This document shows positions 8,153-53,690 of a DNA stretch of 64,000 bases, piece after piece. The stretch spans positions 1 through 64,000 of IMG/VR virus record IMGVR_UViG_3300007735_000804; one strand, given 5' to 3'. The notes under the pieces are model-generated. The model saw only the letters and a list, made by a program, of their open reading frames with translations. It was not told the origin of the DNA and made no database searches. The translations under genes and the position numbers were made by a program. How positions within the stretch are numbered: position 1 is the first letter of the stretch; every line of letters begins with the position of its first letter.

Positions 8153-9439
8153 TCACCCGATGGATGGTGCAGTCAAGGCAACCGAAGTTGTTTGAGCAGC
8201 AGCAAGGTCAAGTGGGAAGTTGTGAGCATTCCTTCTGTTTTAACCTCTGTCGCCAGAGGGAGCGGACTATATCATCACTTATAAGAGTGTCGGACGCTAG
8301 TGGCGTATTACGGATGAAGCGTCATCCACCGCCTAGTCTCTGAACCTTCCTTACACGCTTGCAAGGCTTGGATGCTGATTGTCTACAAGAGAGTTCCAGC
8401 AATTCATCCGATTTAACGAGCGCCATGCAGACACAAAACGCTCATGCATTACCTCAATCCCTAAATTAGCAGAATTCAATACATCTGCCCAAGTTTTAAT
8501 AACACGGTTTTGACTATCAGTAATGCTTTGAACAAAGTTAAATCCATTGAGATTATAACTCATAGTAGCAATACCTAAAGAAGTAAACCAAATTCCAACT
8601 ACAGGAAGTGCTGCTAGGAAAAAGTGCAGTGAACGGGAATTATTAAATGATGCGTATTGAAAAATCAATCGACCGAAATACCCGTGAGCAGCAACAATAT
8701 TATAGGTTTCCTCTTCTTGACCAAACTTGTATCCATAGTTTTGTGATTCAGATTCAGTCGTTTCACGAATGAGTGAAGAAGTAACCAAAGAACCGTGCAT
8801 TGCTCCAGCAAATGCACCACCAAAAACACCTGCAACTCCCATCATATGAAAAGGATGCATAAGGATATTGTGTTCTGCTTGGAATACAAGCATAAAGTTA
8901 AAAGTTCCAGAAATACCGAGAGGCATACCATCACTAAAACTTCCTTGTCCAATTGGATAGAGAAGAAATACCGCAGTTGCAGCAATAGCAGGAGCAGAAT
9001 AAGCAACAAAAATCCAAGGACGCATACCAAGACGATAAGAGAGTTCCCACTCTCGCATAGCATACATCCAAATACCAATCAGGAAGTGAAAAACAATTAG
9101 TTGATATTCACCACCATTATATGCCCATTCTTCTAAGGATTGTGCTTCCCAGATTGGGTAAAAGTGCAGTCCAATTGCATTGGACGAAGGAACAACAGCA
9201 CCAGAAATGATGTTGTTTCCCCACATAAGAGAACCAGCAACGGGTTCCCTAATACCGTCAATGTCTGTTGGGGGTGCTGCAATAAAAGCAAGAATAAAGC
9301 AAGCAGTAGCAGCAATAAGACACGGAATCATAATAGTTCCCGACCACCCCACATAAAGTCGGTTGTCGGTAGAAGTAACCCACTGGCAAAAAGATTCCCA
9401 AGGGTTAGTAGAATTGCGTTGTGCAATAGAAGCAGTCAT
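8153..9439 (-). CDS. psbA: Photosystem II D1 protein, 359 aa; exon 1 9439-8438, exon 2 8230-8153
   Basis: MTASIAQR...EVMHER joined to [25 protein letters not shown]; Y161, D170, E189, H190, H198, H215, H272, H332, E333, D342 and A344 are present. Confidence 0.97.
8231..8437 (-). mobile_element. Group I self-splicing intron (207 nt) in psbA after codon 334
   Basis: Exon ends in U and intron ends in G; P1 GAGCGU/GCGCUC; core elements AATTGCTGGAA (P), AATCAGCA (Q), GTTCAGAGACTA (R), ATATAGTCC (S). Confidence 0.95.
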
Positions 9440-9562
9440 TTTCGTTAAAGGGTAAGTAAAAGTCCAGGGGGAACTGGATAGTACGTTATTCCCCACAGCA
9501 CCCTCCACTGTGGGCATGAGAGACGTTTTTATACTCCCCATAGGTCTCGGTTAGTGGGAGTC
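9440..9562 (-). ncRNA. Structured psbA 5' UTR, PhotoRC-II-like motif
   Basis: Hairpin CCCACAG-TGGAGGGTG-CTGTGGG, plus ACTCCC/GGGAGT and GAGAC/GTCTC pairings; family assignment from recall. Confidence 0.6.
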
Positions 9563-9609
9563 ACAGTGTTGCGAAATGTTTTAATTTCGTAACATTTGTT
9601 TACCTATTT

Positions 9610-29087: not shown

Positions 29088-29588
29088 TTAATCACTTCTT
29101 AATGAATATTTTTCTAAAAGTTGTGGGGAGTATTGTTCTAAAACAGGTGCATCTCCACTCTCTTCTCTTTTTTTCTTCTCAAGATCATATACTCTATTTC
29201 TAATTTCAGTTGAAGAATACTTATGTTTTCTCAAATGATAAAATAAGTCTATATCATGATCAATACAATACTGTTTACCAGTAAAGTCTCTATCTACATA
29301 CTCTTCACTCAAAAAACGGATATGAATTGTTTGAGTTTGAATTAGATTAAGTAAATCTTCTTCAGTCTCATAAACTAGAATCTCATCAACATATTTACAT
29401 GCTTGAAGTTGAACATAACGTTCATATACAGATTGAGCTGGTTTATTTTTAACACCAGGTCTATCAATTGTTGGATCAACTTGAAGTGCAACTTTAAGAT
29501 AATCACACATTTCTTTTTCCATTTTGAGCATTGTAACATGCCCAGCATGAAATAAATCAAACGAGCTACAATTAAATCCTATTTTCAT
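29088..29588 (-). CDS. Cytidylyltransferase, TagD-like
   Basis: FDLFHAGH (HxGH), SSTEIR. Confidence 0.85.
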   Translation of the reverse strand: MKIGFNCSSFDLFHAGHVTMLKMEKEMCDYLKVALQVDPTIDRPGVKNKPAQSVYERYVQLQACKYVDEILVYETEEDLLNLIQTQTIHIRFLSEEYVDRDFTGKQYCIDHDIDLFYHLRKHKYSSTEIRNRVYDLEKKKREESGDAPVLEQYSPQLLEKYSLRSD

Positions 29589-29653
29589 ATGAGTATTGTT
29601 TTTTTTATAATTATACTAAAAAAGATGGGTTTATGCAACCCACCTTCATGTAC

Positions 29654-30057
29654 TCAGGCTCGCCACCAATTCTTTGACTGGAAATTGGAAACCAGGCGGG
29701 AGAGAGTCCCATCCGCACCACTTGCTTTTTAATGGAAAAGCAAGAAACCATAAGGGGTCAGATTGACTCCACCACTTGGTTTTAGGAAACCAAGAAAAGT
29801 TGGGTTAACTTTGATAGTTCGGTAATACCAAAGAATGCTATCAGAAATAGCACGTCCCAGAGTTTAAGTTTGATAGCAAAAGGAATACCAAAGAGTCCTC
29901 CGATAAACTTAATTGCTAGACCAAACTTAAAGTTTCCCCACAACATAACTTGATAACCAAGCATTAGGAGAAAGTTTCCAAGATACCTCAAGATACTTGA
30001 TTTAGACATAAGGGGTTTGCTCCCGACCAGGGCTTAGTTTTGAGTCATAACCGAGAC
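29654..30057 (-). ncRNA. manA-like structured RNA, interrupted by a 75-codon ORF
   Basis: 5' part GTCTCGGTTATGAC...CCCTGGTCGGGA; three TTTC-hairpin-TGGYG units at 29661-29797; upstream of sugar genes; family assignment from recall. Confidence 0.6.
29782..30009 (-). CDS. Small multi-TM membrane protein
   Basis: 75 aa with three hydrophobic segments; stop codon lies in the loop of an RNA hairpin. Confidence 0.65.
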   Translation of the reverse strand: MSKSSILRYLGNFLLMLGYQVMLWGNFKFGLAIKFIGGLFGIPFAIKLKLWDVLFLIAFFGITELSKLTQLFLVS

Positions 30058-30293
30058 TATTCATCATCGTCTTTTACATAACAAGGAACTCGATCTGGAT
30101 CTAACCATTTCGCATACTCAATATCCTCCATTGCAGTAGAACATTGTAGAACATTATCAAAAAGATAAATGTCATTCCAGCGTTTTGTATAGTAATTTTG
30201 TTTTTGTAAACGATAATCGGGGTTACCGTTTATTTCAAGGATACCTGCTTCAACAAAACGATATCCTTCACGCTCCAGGAGAACCTTACTCAC
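30057..30293 (-). CDS. Hypothetical cyanophage protein
   Basis: 78 aa, coupled to the upstream gene. Confidence 0.65.
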   Translation of the reverse strand: MSKVLLEREGYRFVEAGILEINGNPDYRLQKQNYYTKRWNDIYLFDNVLQCSTAMEDIEYAKWLDPDRVPCYVKDDDE

Positions 30294-30502
30294 GCTTCAA
30301 CTGCCTCAAGATCGCTGGCGACATACTCCATAAGCATTTCGTAGTCGTCAAGGGGGTCACCAGAAAATACCACTCCTTCATTTTCGTAGAAGCGGCGCAC
30401 CTTTTTATAAAGTTTCGGACTCTTTACATCAAGATAGATTTCCCCGTTAGCAGCAAGACGGAGAGTGCTAACATCTTTTTTGAATTTTTGAATCAGAGAC
30501 AT
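30290..30502 (-). CDS. Hypothetical cyanophage protein
   Basis: Probable start MSLIQKF, after a TTGACT/TATAAT promoter. Confidence 0.65.
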   Translation of the reverse strand: MSLIQKFKKDVSTLRLAANGEIYLDVKSPKLYKKVRRFYENEGVVFSGDPLDDYEMLMEYVASDLEAVEA

Positions 30503-30577
30503 TGTTTTGAATTGTTGCCTTAGTATTATAAGGGTTGTTGAGTGTTTAGTCAAGTGTGCCAGTGAAGTAACTGGCAA

Positions 30578-30651
30578 TCGGGCATAGAGGATTTGAACCT
30601 CTGGCCTTTCCGCCCCAAACGGAACGCGCTACCAAACTGCGCTAATGCCCG
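30578..30651 (-). tRNA. tRNA-Pro(UGG)
   Basis: Cloverleaf; TTCCG-TT TGG GG-CGGAA; GGTTCAAATCC. Confidence 0.93.
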
Positions 30652-32131: not shown

Positions 32132-32215
32132 CGGAAAGGGTGGGATTCGAACCCACGGTGCTATTAACACGACAGTTTTCAAGACTGTTTCCTTAAACCA
32201 CTCGGACACCTTTCC
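32132..32215 (-). tRNA. tRNA-Ser(UGA)
   Basis: ACAGT-CT TGA AA-ACTGT; long variable arm. Confidence 0.93.
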
Positions 32216-32222
32216 ATATAAA

Positions 32223-32294
32223 TGGGAAATGCTAGATTTGAACTAGCGACCTCTGCGTTATCAGCACATTGCTCTACCGCTGAGCTAATCTCCC
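32223..32294 (-). tRNA. tRNA-Ile(GAU)
   Basis: TGTG-CT GAT AA-CGCA; cloverleaf. Confidence 0.9.
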
Positions 32295-32297
32295 ATA

Positions 32298-32389
32298 CGG
32301 AGGATGTTGGATTTGAACCAACGGATGCACTTAAAGTACATCGGGGGATTAGCAATCCCCTGCATTAAACCTAACTCTGCCAATCCTCC
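32298..32389 (-). tRNA. tRNA-Ser(GCU)
   Basis: GGGGA-TT GCT AA-TCCCC; long variable arm. Confidence 0.92.
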
Positions 32390-34105: not shown

Positions 34106-34177
34106 AGCGGAGTATCGGATTCGAACCGACGACGAACTGCTTGGAAGGCAGTCATTCTACCACTGAATTAACTCCGC
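34106..34177 (-). tRNA. tRNA-Gly(UCC)
   Basis: ACTGC-CT TCC AA-GCAGT. Confidence 0.93.
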
Positions 34178-34223
34178 AAAGTGGGGGATTTCTCCCCCAA
34201 CACACTTCCTTCACACAAAAGAA

Positions 34224-34252
34224 AGTATAAGACATAATATGAATTATGTCAA
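34224..34252 (-). promoter_or_regulatory. Sigma70 promoter with a palindromic spacer
   Basis: TTGACA-17-TATACT; GACATAAT-N4-ATTATGTC inverted repeat. Confidence 0.75.
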
Positions 34253-34253
34253 G

Positions 34254-34326
34254 AGCCCCCGCTCGGAATCGAACCGAGAATCTTCCGCTTACAAGGCGGA
34301 TGCAGTAACCGTTATGCTACAAGGGC
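34254..34326 (-). tRNA. tRNA-Thr(UGU)
   Basis: TCCGC-CT TGT AA-GCGGA. Confidence 0.93.
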
Positions 34327-34330
34327 AAAT

Positions 34331-34538
34331 GGGTAACGAGTGCCCGTCACCCGCAGAAGACACTTTCTGCAATTTTCACTGCATTAGAGGGCAGTGAATA
34401 AAAACATTTCCAGTAGCCGCTCTTATCTCCCATAAGGAAGATGTAGGCATCGAACCTACAAAGGACAGTCCCGAAGAACTGCTGGGAATTCCACCCAGAA
34501 TGTAGTTTAGAAGAATCAGACATTTCCAATCCCTCTAA
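34331..34538 (-). ncRNA. Unidentified highly structured RNA between tRNA-Asn and tRNA-Thr
   Basis: Seven hairpins plus a possible TTAGAGG/CCTCTAA pseudoknot. Confidence 0.6.
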
Positions 34539-34610
34539 CTCCCCAACCTCGATTCGAACGAGGGACAGCAAAATTAACAGTTTTGAGTTCTACCACTGAA
34601 CTATTGGGGA
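34539..34610 (-). tRNA. tRNA-Asn(GUU)
   Basis: CAAAA-CT GTT AA-TTTTG. Confidence 0.92.
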
Positions 34611-34635
34611 ATGGTTTGGAGCATTATACTCCAAG

Positions 34636-34708
34636 CAGGGCAGGAGGGATTTGAACCCCCATCTTACATCTTAGAAGGATGGTGCATGATCCGTCATGCT
34701 GCTGCCCC
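34636..34708 (-). tRNA. tRNA-Arg(UCU)
   Basis: CATC-CT TCT AA-GATG; GGTTCAAATCC. Confidence 0.9.
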
Positions 34709-53531: not shown

Positions 53532-53613
53532 TGCCCAAAAGAGGACTTGAACCTCCACAGATATTTCTACAGGAACCTAAACCCTGCGCGTCTACCAATT
53601 CCGCCATTTGGGC
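53532..53613 (-). tRNA. tRNA-Leu(UAG)
   Basis: CAGGG-TT TAG GT-TCCTG; variable arm. Confidence 0.92.
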
Positions 53614-53616
53614 AAG

Positions 53617-53690
53617 TGGAGAATATCGGACTCGAACCGATGACTTCATCCTTGCAAAGGATGCGCTACTACCAACTGAGCTAATTCCCC
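53617..53690 (-). tRNA. tRNA-Ala(UGC)
   Basis: CATCC-TT TGC AA-GGATG; G3:U70 pair. Confidence 0.92.

What the first reader, a model, noticed from the sequence alone, without database searches (positions are those of the whole stretch)
29654..30057. manA-like RNA split by an inserted membrane-protein ORF, with three repeated hairpin units
Seen: three units TTTC-stem/TTCC-containing loop-stem-TGGYG at about 29770-29797, 29716-29749 and 29661-29693. A separate structured 5' block lies at 30010-30057. Between them is a 75-codon ORF whose stop falls in the loop of the first unit. GACCCCTTATG/AACCCCTTATG occurs both at the ORF start and before unit 2, hinting at insertion with partial duplication. 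It sits at the head of the glycan island. Inference: an RNA regulator that tolerates, or is coupled to, translation of an internal ORF.
Basis: partly seen in the sequence, partly recalled or inferred. Interest (0 to 1): 0.65.

Follow-up and report, generated by a model that had tools for sequence, protein, structure and literature searches.

The report
Tandem wcaG RNA modules hosting a gene
This cyanophage locus holds the already-known wcaG RNA (not manA), preceded by a second, unannotated wcaG-type unit whose two halves are separated by a real small membrane-protein gene, which suggests that this orphan riboswitch candidate is built from self-contained modules sitting at gene boundaries.

Summary
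The described sequence features are real, on the minus strand. Rfam assigns 29752-29652 to wcaG (RF01761, 101.9 bits). manA is not hit at all.

The extra upstream hairpin (29797-29754) and the 5' block (30058-30010) are conserved, covarying RNA modules outside the 98-nt Rfam model. Together they correspond to a second wcaG-type unit. A model built only from contiguous ORF-less copies of that unit hits the window as two halves (E 4.5e-6 and 5e-11) that flank the 75-codon ORF. Rfam's own wcaG model recognises the contiguous form in other phages (48.4 and 39.1 bits).

The ORF is a genuine gene: phrog_2318, with dN/dS 0.14. It is one of at least four ORF families nested at inter-module junctions in other phages.

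The array lies at the 3' end of a small-gene unit (phrog_481 is upstream in 62 of 89 loci). It ends in an intrinsic terminator (70 of 83 loci) that overlaps a promoter-like site for the downstream sugar-nucleotide genes.

The CCCCTTATG repeat is the homologous end of two module tails, not an insertion scar.

The function is unproven. I favour autonomous modules bound by a common factor over a single composite riboswitch aptamer. I classify it as a new variant of a known kind.

The parts
30525..30553 (-). Sigma70-type promoter-like site (TTGACT-17-TATAAT). It is a candidate start of the small-gene unit that carries the array. A perfect TTGACA-17-TATAAT also lies at 30714-30686, before the tRNA at 30651-30578.
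   Evidence: 11/12 and 12/12 matches
30290..30502 (-). Small ORF of family phrog_552. The mechanical ORF runs to 30577, but the PHROG match starts at residue 26 and a promoter-like site lies inside the longer version.
   Evidence: homologues upstream of the array in 46/89 loci
30057..30293 (-). ORF78, family phrog_481 ('gp206-like'), the conserved upstream neighbour of wcaG arrays. Its stop codon TAG (30059-30057) overlaps the first hairpin of the array.
   Evidence: E 1.3e-39; 62/89 loci; alignment A4; AlphaFold model pLDDT 80.7, four strands then helices, with no significant fold match
30010..30058 (-). Module B+t2, the 5' half of the upstream wcaG-type unit. It comprises hairpin AGUC-UCGGUUAU-GACU (30058-30043), an A-rich linker, UGGUCGGGAG, and a short GGG..CCC tail ending ...ACCCCUU directly at the ORF75 ATG. 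GGGAG (30024-30020) is the likely Shine-Dalgarno, 10 nt before the ATG.
   Evidence: R1 model positions 1-50, 19.8 bits, E 4.5e-6; stem covariation over 73 distinct copies; the same docking to the ATG in all ORF-bearing loci
29782..30009 (-). ORF75, a real 75-aa hydrophobic protein gene (phrog_2318) nested between two RNA modules. Its last codons (QLFLVS, stop) are co-encoded with UUUC, the 5' stem and the loop of hairpin P0.
   Evidence: E 7.9e-20, full length; median dN/dS 0.144 over 170 pairs; 189 phage records carry homologues, many without the RNA
29754..29797 (-). It comprises UUUC, hairpin P0 (29794-29788 with 29781-29775), UGGUGGAG, and the small hairpin GUCA..UGAC followed by CCCC.
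   Evidence: R1 positions 53-109, 36.5 bits, E 5e-11; weak Rfam wcaG hit of 18.8 bits; 4/7 pairs compensatory
29652..29752 (-). Canonical wcaG RNA (modules A+t3 and A+t4): P1 29744-29721, UGGUGCGGAUGGG with P2 hairpin, P3 29688-29666 with pseudoknot CUGG (29695-29692) to CCAG (29680-29677), and UGGCG.
   Evidence: RF01761, 101.9 bits, full length; P2, P3 and pseudoknot covariation
29616..29647 (-). Intrinsic terminator (11-bp stem, loop GCAUA, T run) that closes the unit.
   Evidence: an equivalent terminator in 70/83 loci, with covarying stems
29610..29638 (-). Promoter-like TTGCAT-17-TATAAT overlapping the terminator (a PeSL-like composite), 21 nt upstream of the cytidylyltransferase ATG at 29588. 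The -35 matches the consensus in only 3 of 6 positions, so it is a candidate.
   Evidence: 34/83 loci, always a 17-nt spacer; 2.2% of control windows; PeSL concept in PMC4122927
26857..29588 (-). Downstream sugar-nucleotide genes: cytidylyltransferase-like (29588-29088), dTDP-glucose 4,6-dehydratase-like (29084-28158), dTDP-4-dehydrorhamnose 3,5-epimerase (28210-27641), and an epimerase/reductase (27657-26857).

Best explanation
The locus is a tandem array of four wcaG-type RNA modules, which is two wcaG units, on the minus strand. Each module is a 'head' hairpin followed by a conserved UGGYG-type G-rich string and a short tail hairpin. The head is either UUUC-stem-loop-stem, usually pseudoknotted with its 5' flank, or GUC-NYGGRNN-GAC plus an A-rich linker.

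The downstream unit (29752-29652) is the known wcaG RNA. The upstream unit is split between its two modules by a genuine small membrane-protein gene, ORF75.

The array forms the 3' part of a transcript that also carries two other small genes (phrog_552 and phrog_481). It ends at an intrinsic terminator that overlaps a promoter-like site for the downstream sugar-nucleotide genes.

Shown here:
- the architecture and the covariation;
- the autonomy and variable number (two to at least four) of modules across phages;
- that different small ORFs sit in the junctions between modules;
- that ORF75 is under purifying selection.

Inferred: the modules are self-contained cis-acting sites recognised by one common trans-acting factor. 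I favour a protein that reads the repeated UGGYG sites over a small molecule.
- In this window, binding or folding at B+t2 would gate ORF75 initiation, because its GGGAG Shine-Dalgarno lies in the module tail 10 nt before the ATG.
- Ribosomes terminating in the P0 loop must melt module A+t1, so translation and folding of that module are mutually exclusive.
- The last modules plus the terminator define and protect the 3' end of the unit, rather than acting as the 5' leader of the glycan genes.
For: Identity:
- RF01761 at 101.9 bits.
- The original Stockholm alignment already treats 'GUC-loop-GAC head + UGGUCGGGA..GACCCC + UUUC hairpin + GUGGUGGAG' as one wcaG copy with a second copy in the flank. 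The authors remark that the duplicated UGGYG may be sites for a dimeric protein.

Extra modules:
- 77 of 89 unique loci carry one or two additional modules upstream of the Rfam core.
- P0 covariation and B-head covariation.

Split unit:
- R1 halves at 30059-30010 and 29806-29748, and in 14/14 other ORF-bearing loci.
- Rfam wcaG scores the contiguous upstream unit at 48.4 bits (L052) and 39.1 bits (L050, in tandem with an 8-nt gap).

Autonomy of modules:
- Heads are interchangeable in front of the same tails.
- At least four ORF families, plus two single larger ORFs, are nested at junctions.
- Both halves stay conserved although about 200 nt apart.

ORF docking:
- ...CUGGUCGGGAGCAAACCCCUU-AUG in all ORF-bearing loci, with the stop in the loop or 3' stem of the next head.
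- dN/dS 0.144.

3'-end position:
- A terminator in 70/83 loci.
- TTGCAT/TTGACA-17-TATAAT overlapping it in 34/83 loci, against 2.2% of control windows.
- phrog_481 directly upstream in 62/89 loci.
- tRNA genes follow directly in 11 of 79 loci.

RNA-library contigs of relatives bridge ORF75, A+t1 and the wcaG core (records 9 and 19).
Against: - No factor has been identified. CsrA is absent from the phage. The fold of the syntenic protein ORF78 gives only sub-threshold resemblance to PC4/Pur-alpha-type binders (Foldseek E 0.16, Z<=4.6).
- Downstream genes are strongly enriched for nucleotide-sugar enzymes (at least 42 of 79 loci). This is what a cis-acting riboswitch would predict.
- The -35 of the overlapping promoter is weak (3/6), and the scan tool did not call it.
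- The GGG..CCC tail hairpin that would sequester the ORF75 Shine-Dalgarno is only 3 bp.
- The minimum-free-energy fold of the window RNA does not reproduce P0.
- The RNA evidence is from assembled contigs of relatives, so no transcript ends or levels are known.
- Loci are phylogenetically related, so the counts are not independent events.
Confidence: 0.5

Rival explanations
1. Classical riboswitch (the published hypothesis). The wcaG unit or units bind a small metabolite, for example a nucleotide sugar, and control read-through of the adjacent intrinsic terminator into the downstream glycan genes. The upstream modules add tandem aptamers for a sharper response.
For: - Weinberg 2010 rates wcaG as a probable cis-regulator and riboswitch candidate.
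- It has highly conserved unpaired nucleotides and pseudoknots.
- A terminator follows the motif in 70/83 loci.
- At least 42 of 79 first downstream ORFs are nucleotide-sugar or glycan enzymes of several different families.
- In the window the next genes are a cytidylyltransferase and dTDP-sugar enzymes.
Against: - Terminator stems vary freely and I saw no consistent complementarity to the constant 3' tail, so no antiterminator was found. This was by inspection only.
- A promoter-like -35/-10 lies between the RNA and the genes in 34/83 loci.
- The conserved neighbour is the upstream gene (62/89 loci). Downstream, 11 loci have a tRNA next, and others have 2OG oxygenases, an OMP or unknown proteins.
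- The module number varies from two to at least four and heads are swapped.
- A unit split by 200 nt of translated ORF stays conserved. That is hard to reconcile with a composite two-module aptamer.
Confidence: 0.27
2. Passive punctuation. The modules are ligand-free structural elements that protect the 3' ends of the upstream small-gene mRNAs from exonucleases and insulate the downstream promoter. As repeated sequences next to a PeSL-like terminator/promoter, they also serve as recombination joints where small gene cassettes are swapped.
For: - The modules sit at ORF 3' ends and at the end of the transcription unit.
- Different ORF families, including a 187-aa ORF with a ...YIGKG... motif, occupy the junctions.
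- The downstream cargo is variable.
- PeSL composites are proposed to mediate modular shuffling in T4-like phages (PMC4122927).
Against: - Near-invariant single-stranded strings (UGGUGCGGAUGGG, UGGUGGAGUC, UGGUCGGGA) and loop motifs (NYGGRNN) are conserved far beyond what a generic protective hairpin needs.
- There is only one such array per genome, whereas general stabilisers or recombination motifs are usually dispersed.
Confidence: 0.15
3. One reading: a manA-type RNA that suffered insertion of an ORF, with a short target duplication (CCCCTTATG).
For: The two halves flanking the ORF do belong together, and the repeat exists.
Against: - There is no manA match at E<=10 or in 17 related loci.
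- The repeat is the normal 3' end of the t1 and t2 tails and occurs in ORF-less arrays.
Confidence: 0.02
4. The wcaG core is really a small protein-coding gene: the 46-codon open frame 29751-29611, annotated as a CDS in some phage records.
For: The frame is open in the window. CDS features overlap the RNA in the S-SRM01 and WH25-B records.
Against: - No frame is conserved as open. The three frames are open in 35, 24 and 14 of 76 loci, and the window's own frame in 14.
- Indels in the P2 loop shift the frame.
- Variation is compensatory in the stems.
Confidence: 0.01

Closest known systems
wcaG RNA motif (Rfam RF01761; Weinberg et al. 2010, PMC2864571)
   Same: The region 29752-29652 is a full-length member, with P1, P2, P3 and two UGGYG strings. 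It occurs in a T4-like cyanophage and sits upstream of exopolysaccharide-type genes.
   Different: - The 98-nt model covers only the last two of four modules here.
- The upstream unit uses a different first head (GUC-loop-GAC) and is interrupted by a translated gene.
- The array sits at a transcript 3' end, before a terminator/promoter composite, rather than in an obvious 5' UTR.
- The tandem, modular nature and the nested ORFs are not discussed in the paper text, although the raw alignment flanks show extra copies.
manA RNA motif (Rfam RF01745)
   Same: It is also a cyanophage/marine riboswitch candidate near sugar genes. It can lie a few hundred nt from wcaG in some phages (S-CREM1 Table 4).
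   Different: There is no covariance-model match here or in related loci. It is a different structure.
PeSL composite promoter-terminator elements of T4-like phages (Arbiol 2010; Comeau 2014, PMC4122927)
   Same: A stem-loop terminator is fused to an early-type sigma70 promoter at the edge of a variable gene region.
   Different: PeSLs were described for non-cyano T4-like phages; cyanophages are not mentioned in that paper. Here there is a single conserved copy tied to the wcaG array. In this genome it is the only site meeting both my hairpin and T-run criteria, though the site at 137526 also has a strong hairpin across its -35.
Multi-site protein-binding RNAs and phage translational operators (for example CsrB/RsmZ-type GGA-hairpin arrays and the T4 gp32 leader pseudoknot); recalled from general knowledge, not tested
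   Same: Repeated short G-rich motifs are presented by tandem hairpins in variable copy number. One site overlaps a ribosome-binding site.
   Different: No CsrA in the phage. The motif is UGGYG/NYGGRNN rather than A(N)GGA alone. No binding protein has been identified.
Tandem riboswitch arrangements (for example glycine); recalled from general knowledge
   Same: There are two or more similar structured units in series before a terminator.
   Different: Units here vary from two to at least four modules, exchange heads, and tolerate translated ORFs between them.

Membership tests
wcaG RNA (RF01761): downstream unit 29752-29652 | Covariance-model score at or above the gathering threshold (42 bits) over the full model | tested here: met
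   101.9 bits, model positions 1-98/98
wcaG RNA (RF01761): downstream unit | Three hairpins P1-P3 supported by covariation, and two UGGYG strings | tested here: met
   P3 has 5/6 pairs compensatory, P2 1/5, and pseudoknot CUGG/CCAG 2/4. UGGUG lies at 29720-29716 and UGGCG at 29665-29661. P1 is aligned by the CM but was not counted separately, because MAFFT misaligned it.
wcaG RNA (RF01761): downstream unit | Cis-regulatory position in the 5' UTR of exopolysaccharide or high-light genes | tested here: inconclusive
   Sugar-nucleotide genes follow, but a terminator and a promoter-like site intervene. Transcript ends were not measurable.
wcaG RNA (RF01761): upstream split unit 30058-30010 plus 29797-29754 | Recognised by the Rfam model | tested here: inconclusive
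   In the window only the 3' half gives 18.8 bits, E 0.62. Contiguous ORF-less orthologues score 48.4 (L052, above threshold), 39.1 (L050), 24.9 and 23.8 bits.
wcaG RNA: upstream split unit | Both halves homologous to one contiguous unit elsewhere | tested here: met
   R1, built from 8 ORF-less units: positions 1-50 at E 4.5e-6 and positions 53-109 at E 5e-11. The same holds in 14/14 other loci.
manA RNA (RF01745) | Covariance-model match | tested here: not met
   No hit at E<=10 on 29500-30300. None in the 213-kb genome (that search's controls did not ring). None in 17 related loci.
Riboswitch (general) | Direct, specific ligand binding by the RNA | not testable with these tools
   Needs in-line probing, SHAPE or ITC.
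Riboswitch (general) | Expression platform with mutually exclusive terminator and antiterminator pairing | tested here: inconclusive
   A terminator is present in 70/83 loci, but its stem sequences vary without evident complementarity to the conserved tail. This was by inspection only, not a formal energy test.
PeSL composite terminator/promoter | Stem-loop terminator fused to a sigma70-type early promoter at a variable region | tested here: met
   Terminator at 29647-29621. TTGCAT-17-TATAAT at 29638-29610; found in 34/83 loci against 2.2% of controls. Promoter activity was not tested.
phrog_2318 (ORF75) | Full-length profile match and evidence of coding selection | tested here: met
   E 7.9e-20, positions 1-70/71; median dN/dS 0.144
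DUF6552 (PF20189), for ORF75 | Pfam HMM match | tested here: not met
   No Pfam hit at E<=10. There is only a language-model resemblance of 0.92.
PC4/Pur-alpha-like single-stranded nucleic-acid binders, for ORF78 | Significant structural or profile similarity | tested here: not met
   Foldseek best E 0.16; VIA Z<=4.6. The profile search against PDB found nothing, and Pfam found nothing relevant.

The most novel reading that the evidence does not exclude
wcaG is not a metabolite riboswitch. Instead it is a modular RNA 'punctuation' system. Each roughly 50-nt module would be an operator for a phage-encoded dimeric RNA-binding protein. The best candidate is the product of the syntenic upstream gene phrog_481, whose predicted four-strand-plus-helix fold weakly recalls PC4/Pur-alpha binders. 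Together they would form an autoregulatory ribonucleoprotein that controls translation and 3'-end fate of a cassette of small genes, and that marks the joint where such cassettes are exchanged between cyanophages.
Probability: 0.12. Interest if true: 0.8.

Novelty: new variant of a known kind. Interest (0 to 1): 0.55.

Why it matters
wcaG has been an orphan riboswitch candidate since 2010. It is annotated in cyanophage genomes as a 98-nt cis-regulator of exopolysaccharide genes.

The evidence here points to a different picture:
- The functional unit appears to be a roughly 50-nt module that occurs in arrays of two to at least four.
- The modules tolerate translated genes between them.
- They travel with an upstream gene.
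- They end a transcript in front of a separate promoter-like site.

This changes which constructs should be probed for ligands or proteins: single modules and full arrays, not only the 98-nt core. It also changes which genes should be considered its targets.

There are practical annotation consequences too. Spurious CDSs are called over the RNA, and the real nested ORF is left unannotated in several phage records.

Tried and rejected
- **manA.** No covariance-model hit on the locus, in the genome or in relatives.
- **Modules as a dispersed repeat.** Regex scans of the whole 213-kb genome find them only here.
- **CCCCTTATG as an insertion scar.** Rejected, because the same tail ends occur in ORF-less arrays.
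- **A peptide encoded over the wcaG core.** No conserved open frame.
- **A CsrA-type partner encoded by the phage.** PF02599 is absent, and the controls ring. The host was not tested.
- **ORF78 as a recognisable RNA-binding fold.** The AlphaFold model is good (pLDDT 80.7), but Foldseek, VIA-align, a PDB profile search and Pfam give nothing significant.
- **ORF75 as DUF6552.** Atlas resemblance only, with no HMM hit.
- **RNA-seq.** Only assembled contigs of related phages were available. They show the region in RNA libraries but cannot give ends, strand or level. The drop below 29629 may simply reflect different downstream genes in relatives.
- **A second loop-to-linker pair in the B head (columns 13/29).** It holds only in the long-linker subtype and cannot stack on the first pair in a regular helix, so it is left unexplained.
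- **Thermodynamic folding of the window RNA.** z = -3.4, but the MFE structure does not reproduce the comparative P0 helix.
- **Scoring the joined halves (ORF removed).** This could not be done with Rfam or R1, because the tools take references only. The split-hit result stands in for it.
- **My flank-loop pseudoknot script.** It parses some heads imperfectly, so its percentages are rough.

Full report
**Setting.** The window is part of a 213-kb T4-like cyanophage record. It carries a PhotoRC-II RNA, a group I intron and many tRNAs. The finding lies on the minus strand.

**What Rfam says.** The covariance-model scan gives a full-length wcaG match (RF01761) at 29752-29652: 101.9 bits against a gathering score of 42, E 1.9e-18. 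It is the only canonical copy in the genome. There is no manA hit even at E<=10. manA is also absent from the genome (though that search's controls did not ring) and from 17 related loci. The family name in the finding is wrong.

**The extra pieces are real and conserved.**
- Six isolate phages (S-SRM01, S-B43, S-SZBM1, S-IOM18, S-CAM1, WH25-B) and about 110 environmental loci with the wcaG core were collected.
- Their upstream sequences show that the Rfam core is usually preceded by further modules.
- A module is a head plus a tail.
  - Head A is (G)UUUC-stem-loop-stem.
  - Head B is (N)GUC-NYGGRNN-GAC(N') followed by an A-rich linker.
  - Tails begin UGGUGGAG (t1), UGGUCGGGA (t2), UGGUGCGGAUGGG (t3) or GUGGCG (t4), and mostly continue into a short G/C hairpin.
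- Rfam's wcaG is A+t3 followed by A+t4. The window reads B+t2 (30058-30010), ORF75, A+t1 (29797-29754), A+t3, A+t4.
- Of 89 unique loci with enough flank, 77 have one (46) or two (31) extra t1/t2 modules.
- In 21 loci with A+t1 next to the core, the extra hairpin P0 has 4 of 7 pairs with changes on both sides and 98.6% of cells paired. Zero of 500 shuffles reach the covariation score, and structures slid by one to three columns collapse (0.344 against at most 0.116). The same alignment supports P3 (5/6 pairs) and a pseudoknot CUGG/CCAG (2/4).
- In 73 distinct B heads the 4-bp stem is 99% paired, with its outer pair seen as AU 57, CG 10, GC 1 and UA 1. One loop-to-linker contact covaries as CG 59 / UA 13 with a single mismatch.
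- The modules occur nowhere else in the genome.

**Relation to the published motif.** The 2010 supplement says only that wcaG RNAs carry UGGYG 'in two places', which may be sites for a dimeric protein, and that some hits 'trash P1, P2 or P3'. The raw Stockholm alignment aligns a B head + UGGUCGGGA...GACCCC + UUUC hairpin + GUGGUGGAG as one wcaG copy, with a second copy visible in the flank. The arrays are therefore tandem wcaG units, a point not discussed in the paper.

I tested this in two ways:
- Model R1 was built from eight contiguous, ORF-less upstream units. It hits the window as two separate pieces: positions 1-50 at 30059-30010 (19.8 bits, E 4.5e-6) and positions 53-109 at 29806-29748 (36.5 bits, E 5e-11). 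The same pair of hits, about 200 nt apart, appears in all 14 other ORF-bearing loci tested.
- Rfam's own wcaG model recognises the contiguous upstream unit in ORF-less phages: 48.4 bits in L052, 39.1 bits in L050 (8 nt from the canonical copy), and 24.9 and 23.8 bits in L022 and L009.

It holds for an upstream wcaG-type unit, not for manA and not for the canonical copy.

**The ORF.**
- ORF75 (30009-29782) is a full-length member of phrog_2318 (E 7.9e-20).
- It is hydrophobic throughout and under purifying selection (median dN/dS 0.144 over 170 pairs).
- Homologues occur in 189 cyanomyovirus records.
  - S-SRM01 and S-CAM7 have it inside an array.
  - ACG-2014f has it followed by a single module.
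  - B23, S-RIM14, S-PRM1 and S-MbCM6 have it with no module nearby.
- Arrays without it are the majority (65 of 89). The gene and the RNA are thus independent elements combined in one lineage.
- The docking is precise and invariant. The t2 tail ...CUGGUCGGGAGCAAACCCCUU ends at the ATG, with GGGAG 10 nt upstream. The last codons (...QLFLVS) are co-encoded with UUUC and the 5' stem of the next head, with the stop in the loop or 3' stem.
- The two CCCCTTATG strings are the homologous ends of tails t2 and t1. They also occur in ORF-less arrays such as L112 and L099, so they are not a duplication scar.
- ORF-overlapped P0 heads have lost the 5'-flank/loop pseudoknot: 0 of 23, against about 74% of the core heads by a rough script.
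- ORF75 is not unique in this. Two other small-ORF families (six loci each), a third (two loci), a 187-aa ORF with a ...YIGKG... motif and a 115-aa ORF resembling a sugar-isomerase cupin (both judged by eye, not tested) also lie in inter-module junctions.

**Context.**
- A canonical intrinsic terminator follows the last module in 70 of 83 loci. Its stems covary. In the window it lies at 29647-29621.
- Its conserved 'loop' GTTGCATAAAC or GTTGACAAC, followed by the T run and TATAAT, gives TTGCAT/TTGACA-17 nt-TATAAT in 34 of 83 loci, against 2.2% of control windows. The window copy (29638-29610) lies 21 nt before the cytidylyltransferase ATG.
- The -35 is weak, and the generic scan did not call it.
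- This composite matches the PeSL terminator/promoter concept of T4-like phages. In this genome it is the only one of 13 sigma70-like sites, all on the minus strand, that meets both my hairpin and T-run criteria.
- Upstream on the same strand are strong promoter-like sites at 30714-30686 and 30553-30525.
- The conserved neighbour is upstream: phrog_481 (ORF78) lies within 700 nt of the core in 62 of 89 loci, often ending inside the first B head.
- Downstream is variable, with 27 protein clusters and, in 11 loci, a tRNA next. It is clearly enriched for nucleotide-sugar enzymes, in at least 42 of 79 loci. In the window these are a cytidylyltransferase and dTDP-sugar enzymes.
- Contigs from RNA libraries of related phages cover 29629-30570 and bridge ORF75, A+t1 and the core. 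Being assemblies of relatives, they give no ends or levels.

**Mechanism.**

Shown:
- a modular, covarying RNA array;
- autonomous modules at gene boundaries;
- a nested real gene;
- a 3'-terminal position before a terminator.

Inferred:
- The modules are sites for a common trans-acting factor.
- B+t2 gates ORF75 initiation.
- Terminating ribosomes unfold A+t1.
- The last modules plus the terminator define the transcript end.

I favour a protein over a metabolite for three reasons. The short UGGYG string is repeated two to five times. Heads are interchangeable. A unit stays conserved even when its halves are 200 nt apart and translated. However, no partner was found:
- CsrA is absent.
- ORF78 folds confidently (pLDDT 80.7) into four strands plus helices, but matches PC4/Pur-alpha-type binders only below significance.

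The published riboswitch hypothesis remains a serious rival because of the glycan-gene enrichment and the adjacent terminator. Against it, I saw no antiterminator pairing (by inspection only), and there is a promoter-like site between the RNA and the genes. A peptide-coding reading of the core is excluded.

**Verdict.** The core element is already known. The extended tandem architecture, the B-type modules, the nested ORFs and the 3'-end/PeSL context are, as far as the searched literature shows, not described.

Noticed in passing
window 8243-8482 (-) and 9478-9571 (-): A group I intron (74.4 bits) and a PhotoRC-II RNA (70.8 bits) lie about 1 kb apart. This presumably reflects an intron-containing photosystem gene region.
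   Followed up: no
window 30578-30651, 32132-32389, 34106-34708, 53532-53690 (all -): There are ten tRNA genes in clusters on the same strand as the array. wcaG arrays in other phages are also commonly flanked by tRNA genes. In L078 a tRNA 3' end abuts the first module.
   Followed up: partly
L048 1095-1258 and L121 5743-5905: The last module's GUGGCG tail coincides with the 5' end of a tRNA gene: the Rfam wcaG and tRNA hits overlap by about 10 nt. This suggests the array can be released by tRNA processing.
   Followed up: no
L120 (between modules A+t1 and A+t3): A 187-aa ORF with a ...YIGKGTGRR... motif (GIY-YIG homing-endonuclease-like by eye, not tested) is inserted inside a wcaG array.
   Followed up: no
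L001 (S-SRM01) 1976-2182; L006 (WH25-B) 2064-2189; L127 (S-CAM7) 990-1127: Public records annotate hypothetical CDSs directly over the wcaG RNA. Conversely, the real phrog_2318 ORF is unannotated in S-SRM01 and ACG-2014f.
   Followed up: partly
window 30502-30577 (-): The mechanical 95-aa ORF probably starts at 30502. The PHROG match begins at residue 26, and a TTGACT-17-TATAAT promoter-like site (30553-30525) lies inside the longer version.
   Followed up: partly
alignment A4; for example L060, L046, L068: In many phages the B-head hairpin is translated as the C-terminal tail of phrog_481 (...EDTDGL stop, from GAA GAC ACG GAU GGU CUA UAA). The stem appears as GAC..GUC there, against GUC..GAC elsewhere. 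A further inverted form, AGAC..GUCU, occurs in L009-type loci.
   Followed up: partly
alignment A2, columns 10/30 and 13/29: B-head loop position 2 covaries with a linker purine (CG 59 / UA 13 / 1 other). Loop position 5 covaries with the preceding linker base, but only in the long-linker subtype (AU 24 / GC 11). The two pairs cannot stack in a regular helix, so the geometry is unexplained.
   Followed up: partly
whole genome G000: All 13 strict TTG(A/C)(C/A)(A/T)-17-TATAAT sites lie on the minus strand. The site at 137526 also has a strong hairpin (-13.9 kcal/mol) across its -35.
   Followed up: no
L126 (ACG-2014f) 913-1010: A minimal version exists: the phrog_2318 ORF is followed by a single UUUC-hairpin-GUGGCGCACCUG module and a terminator, with no full wcaG core.
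   Followed up: no
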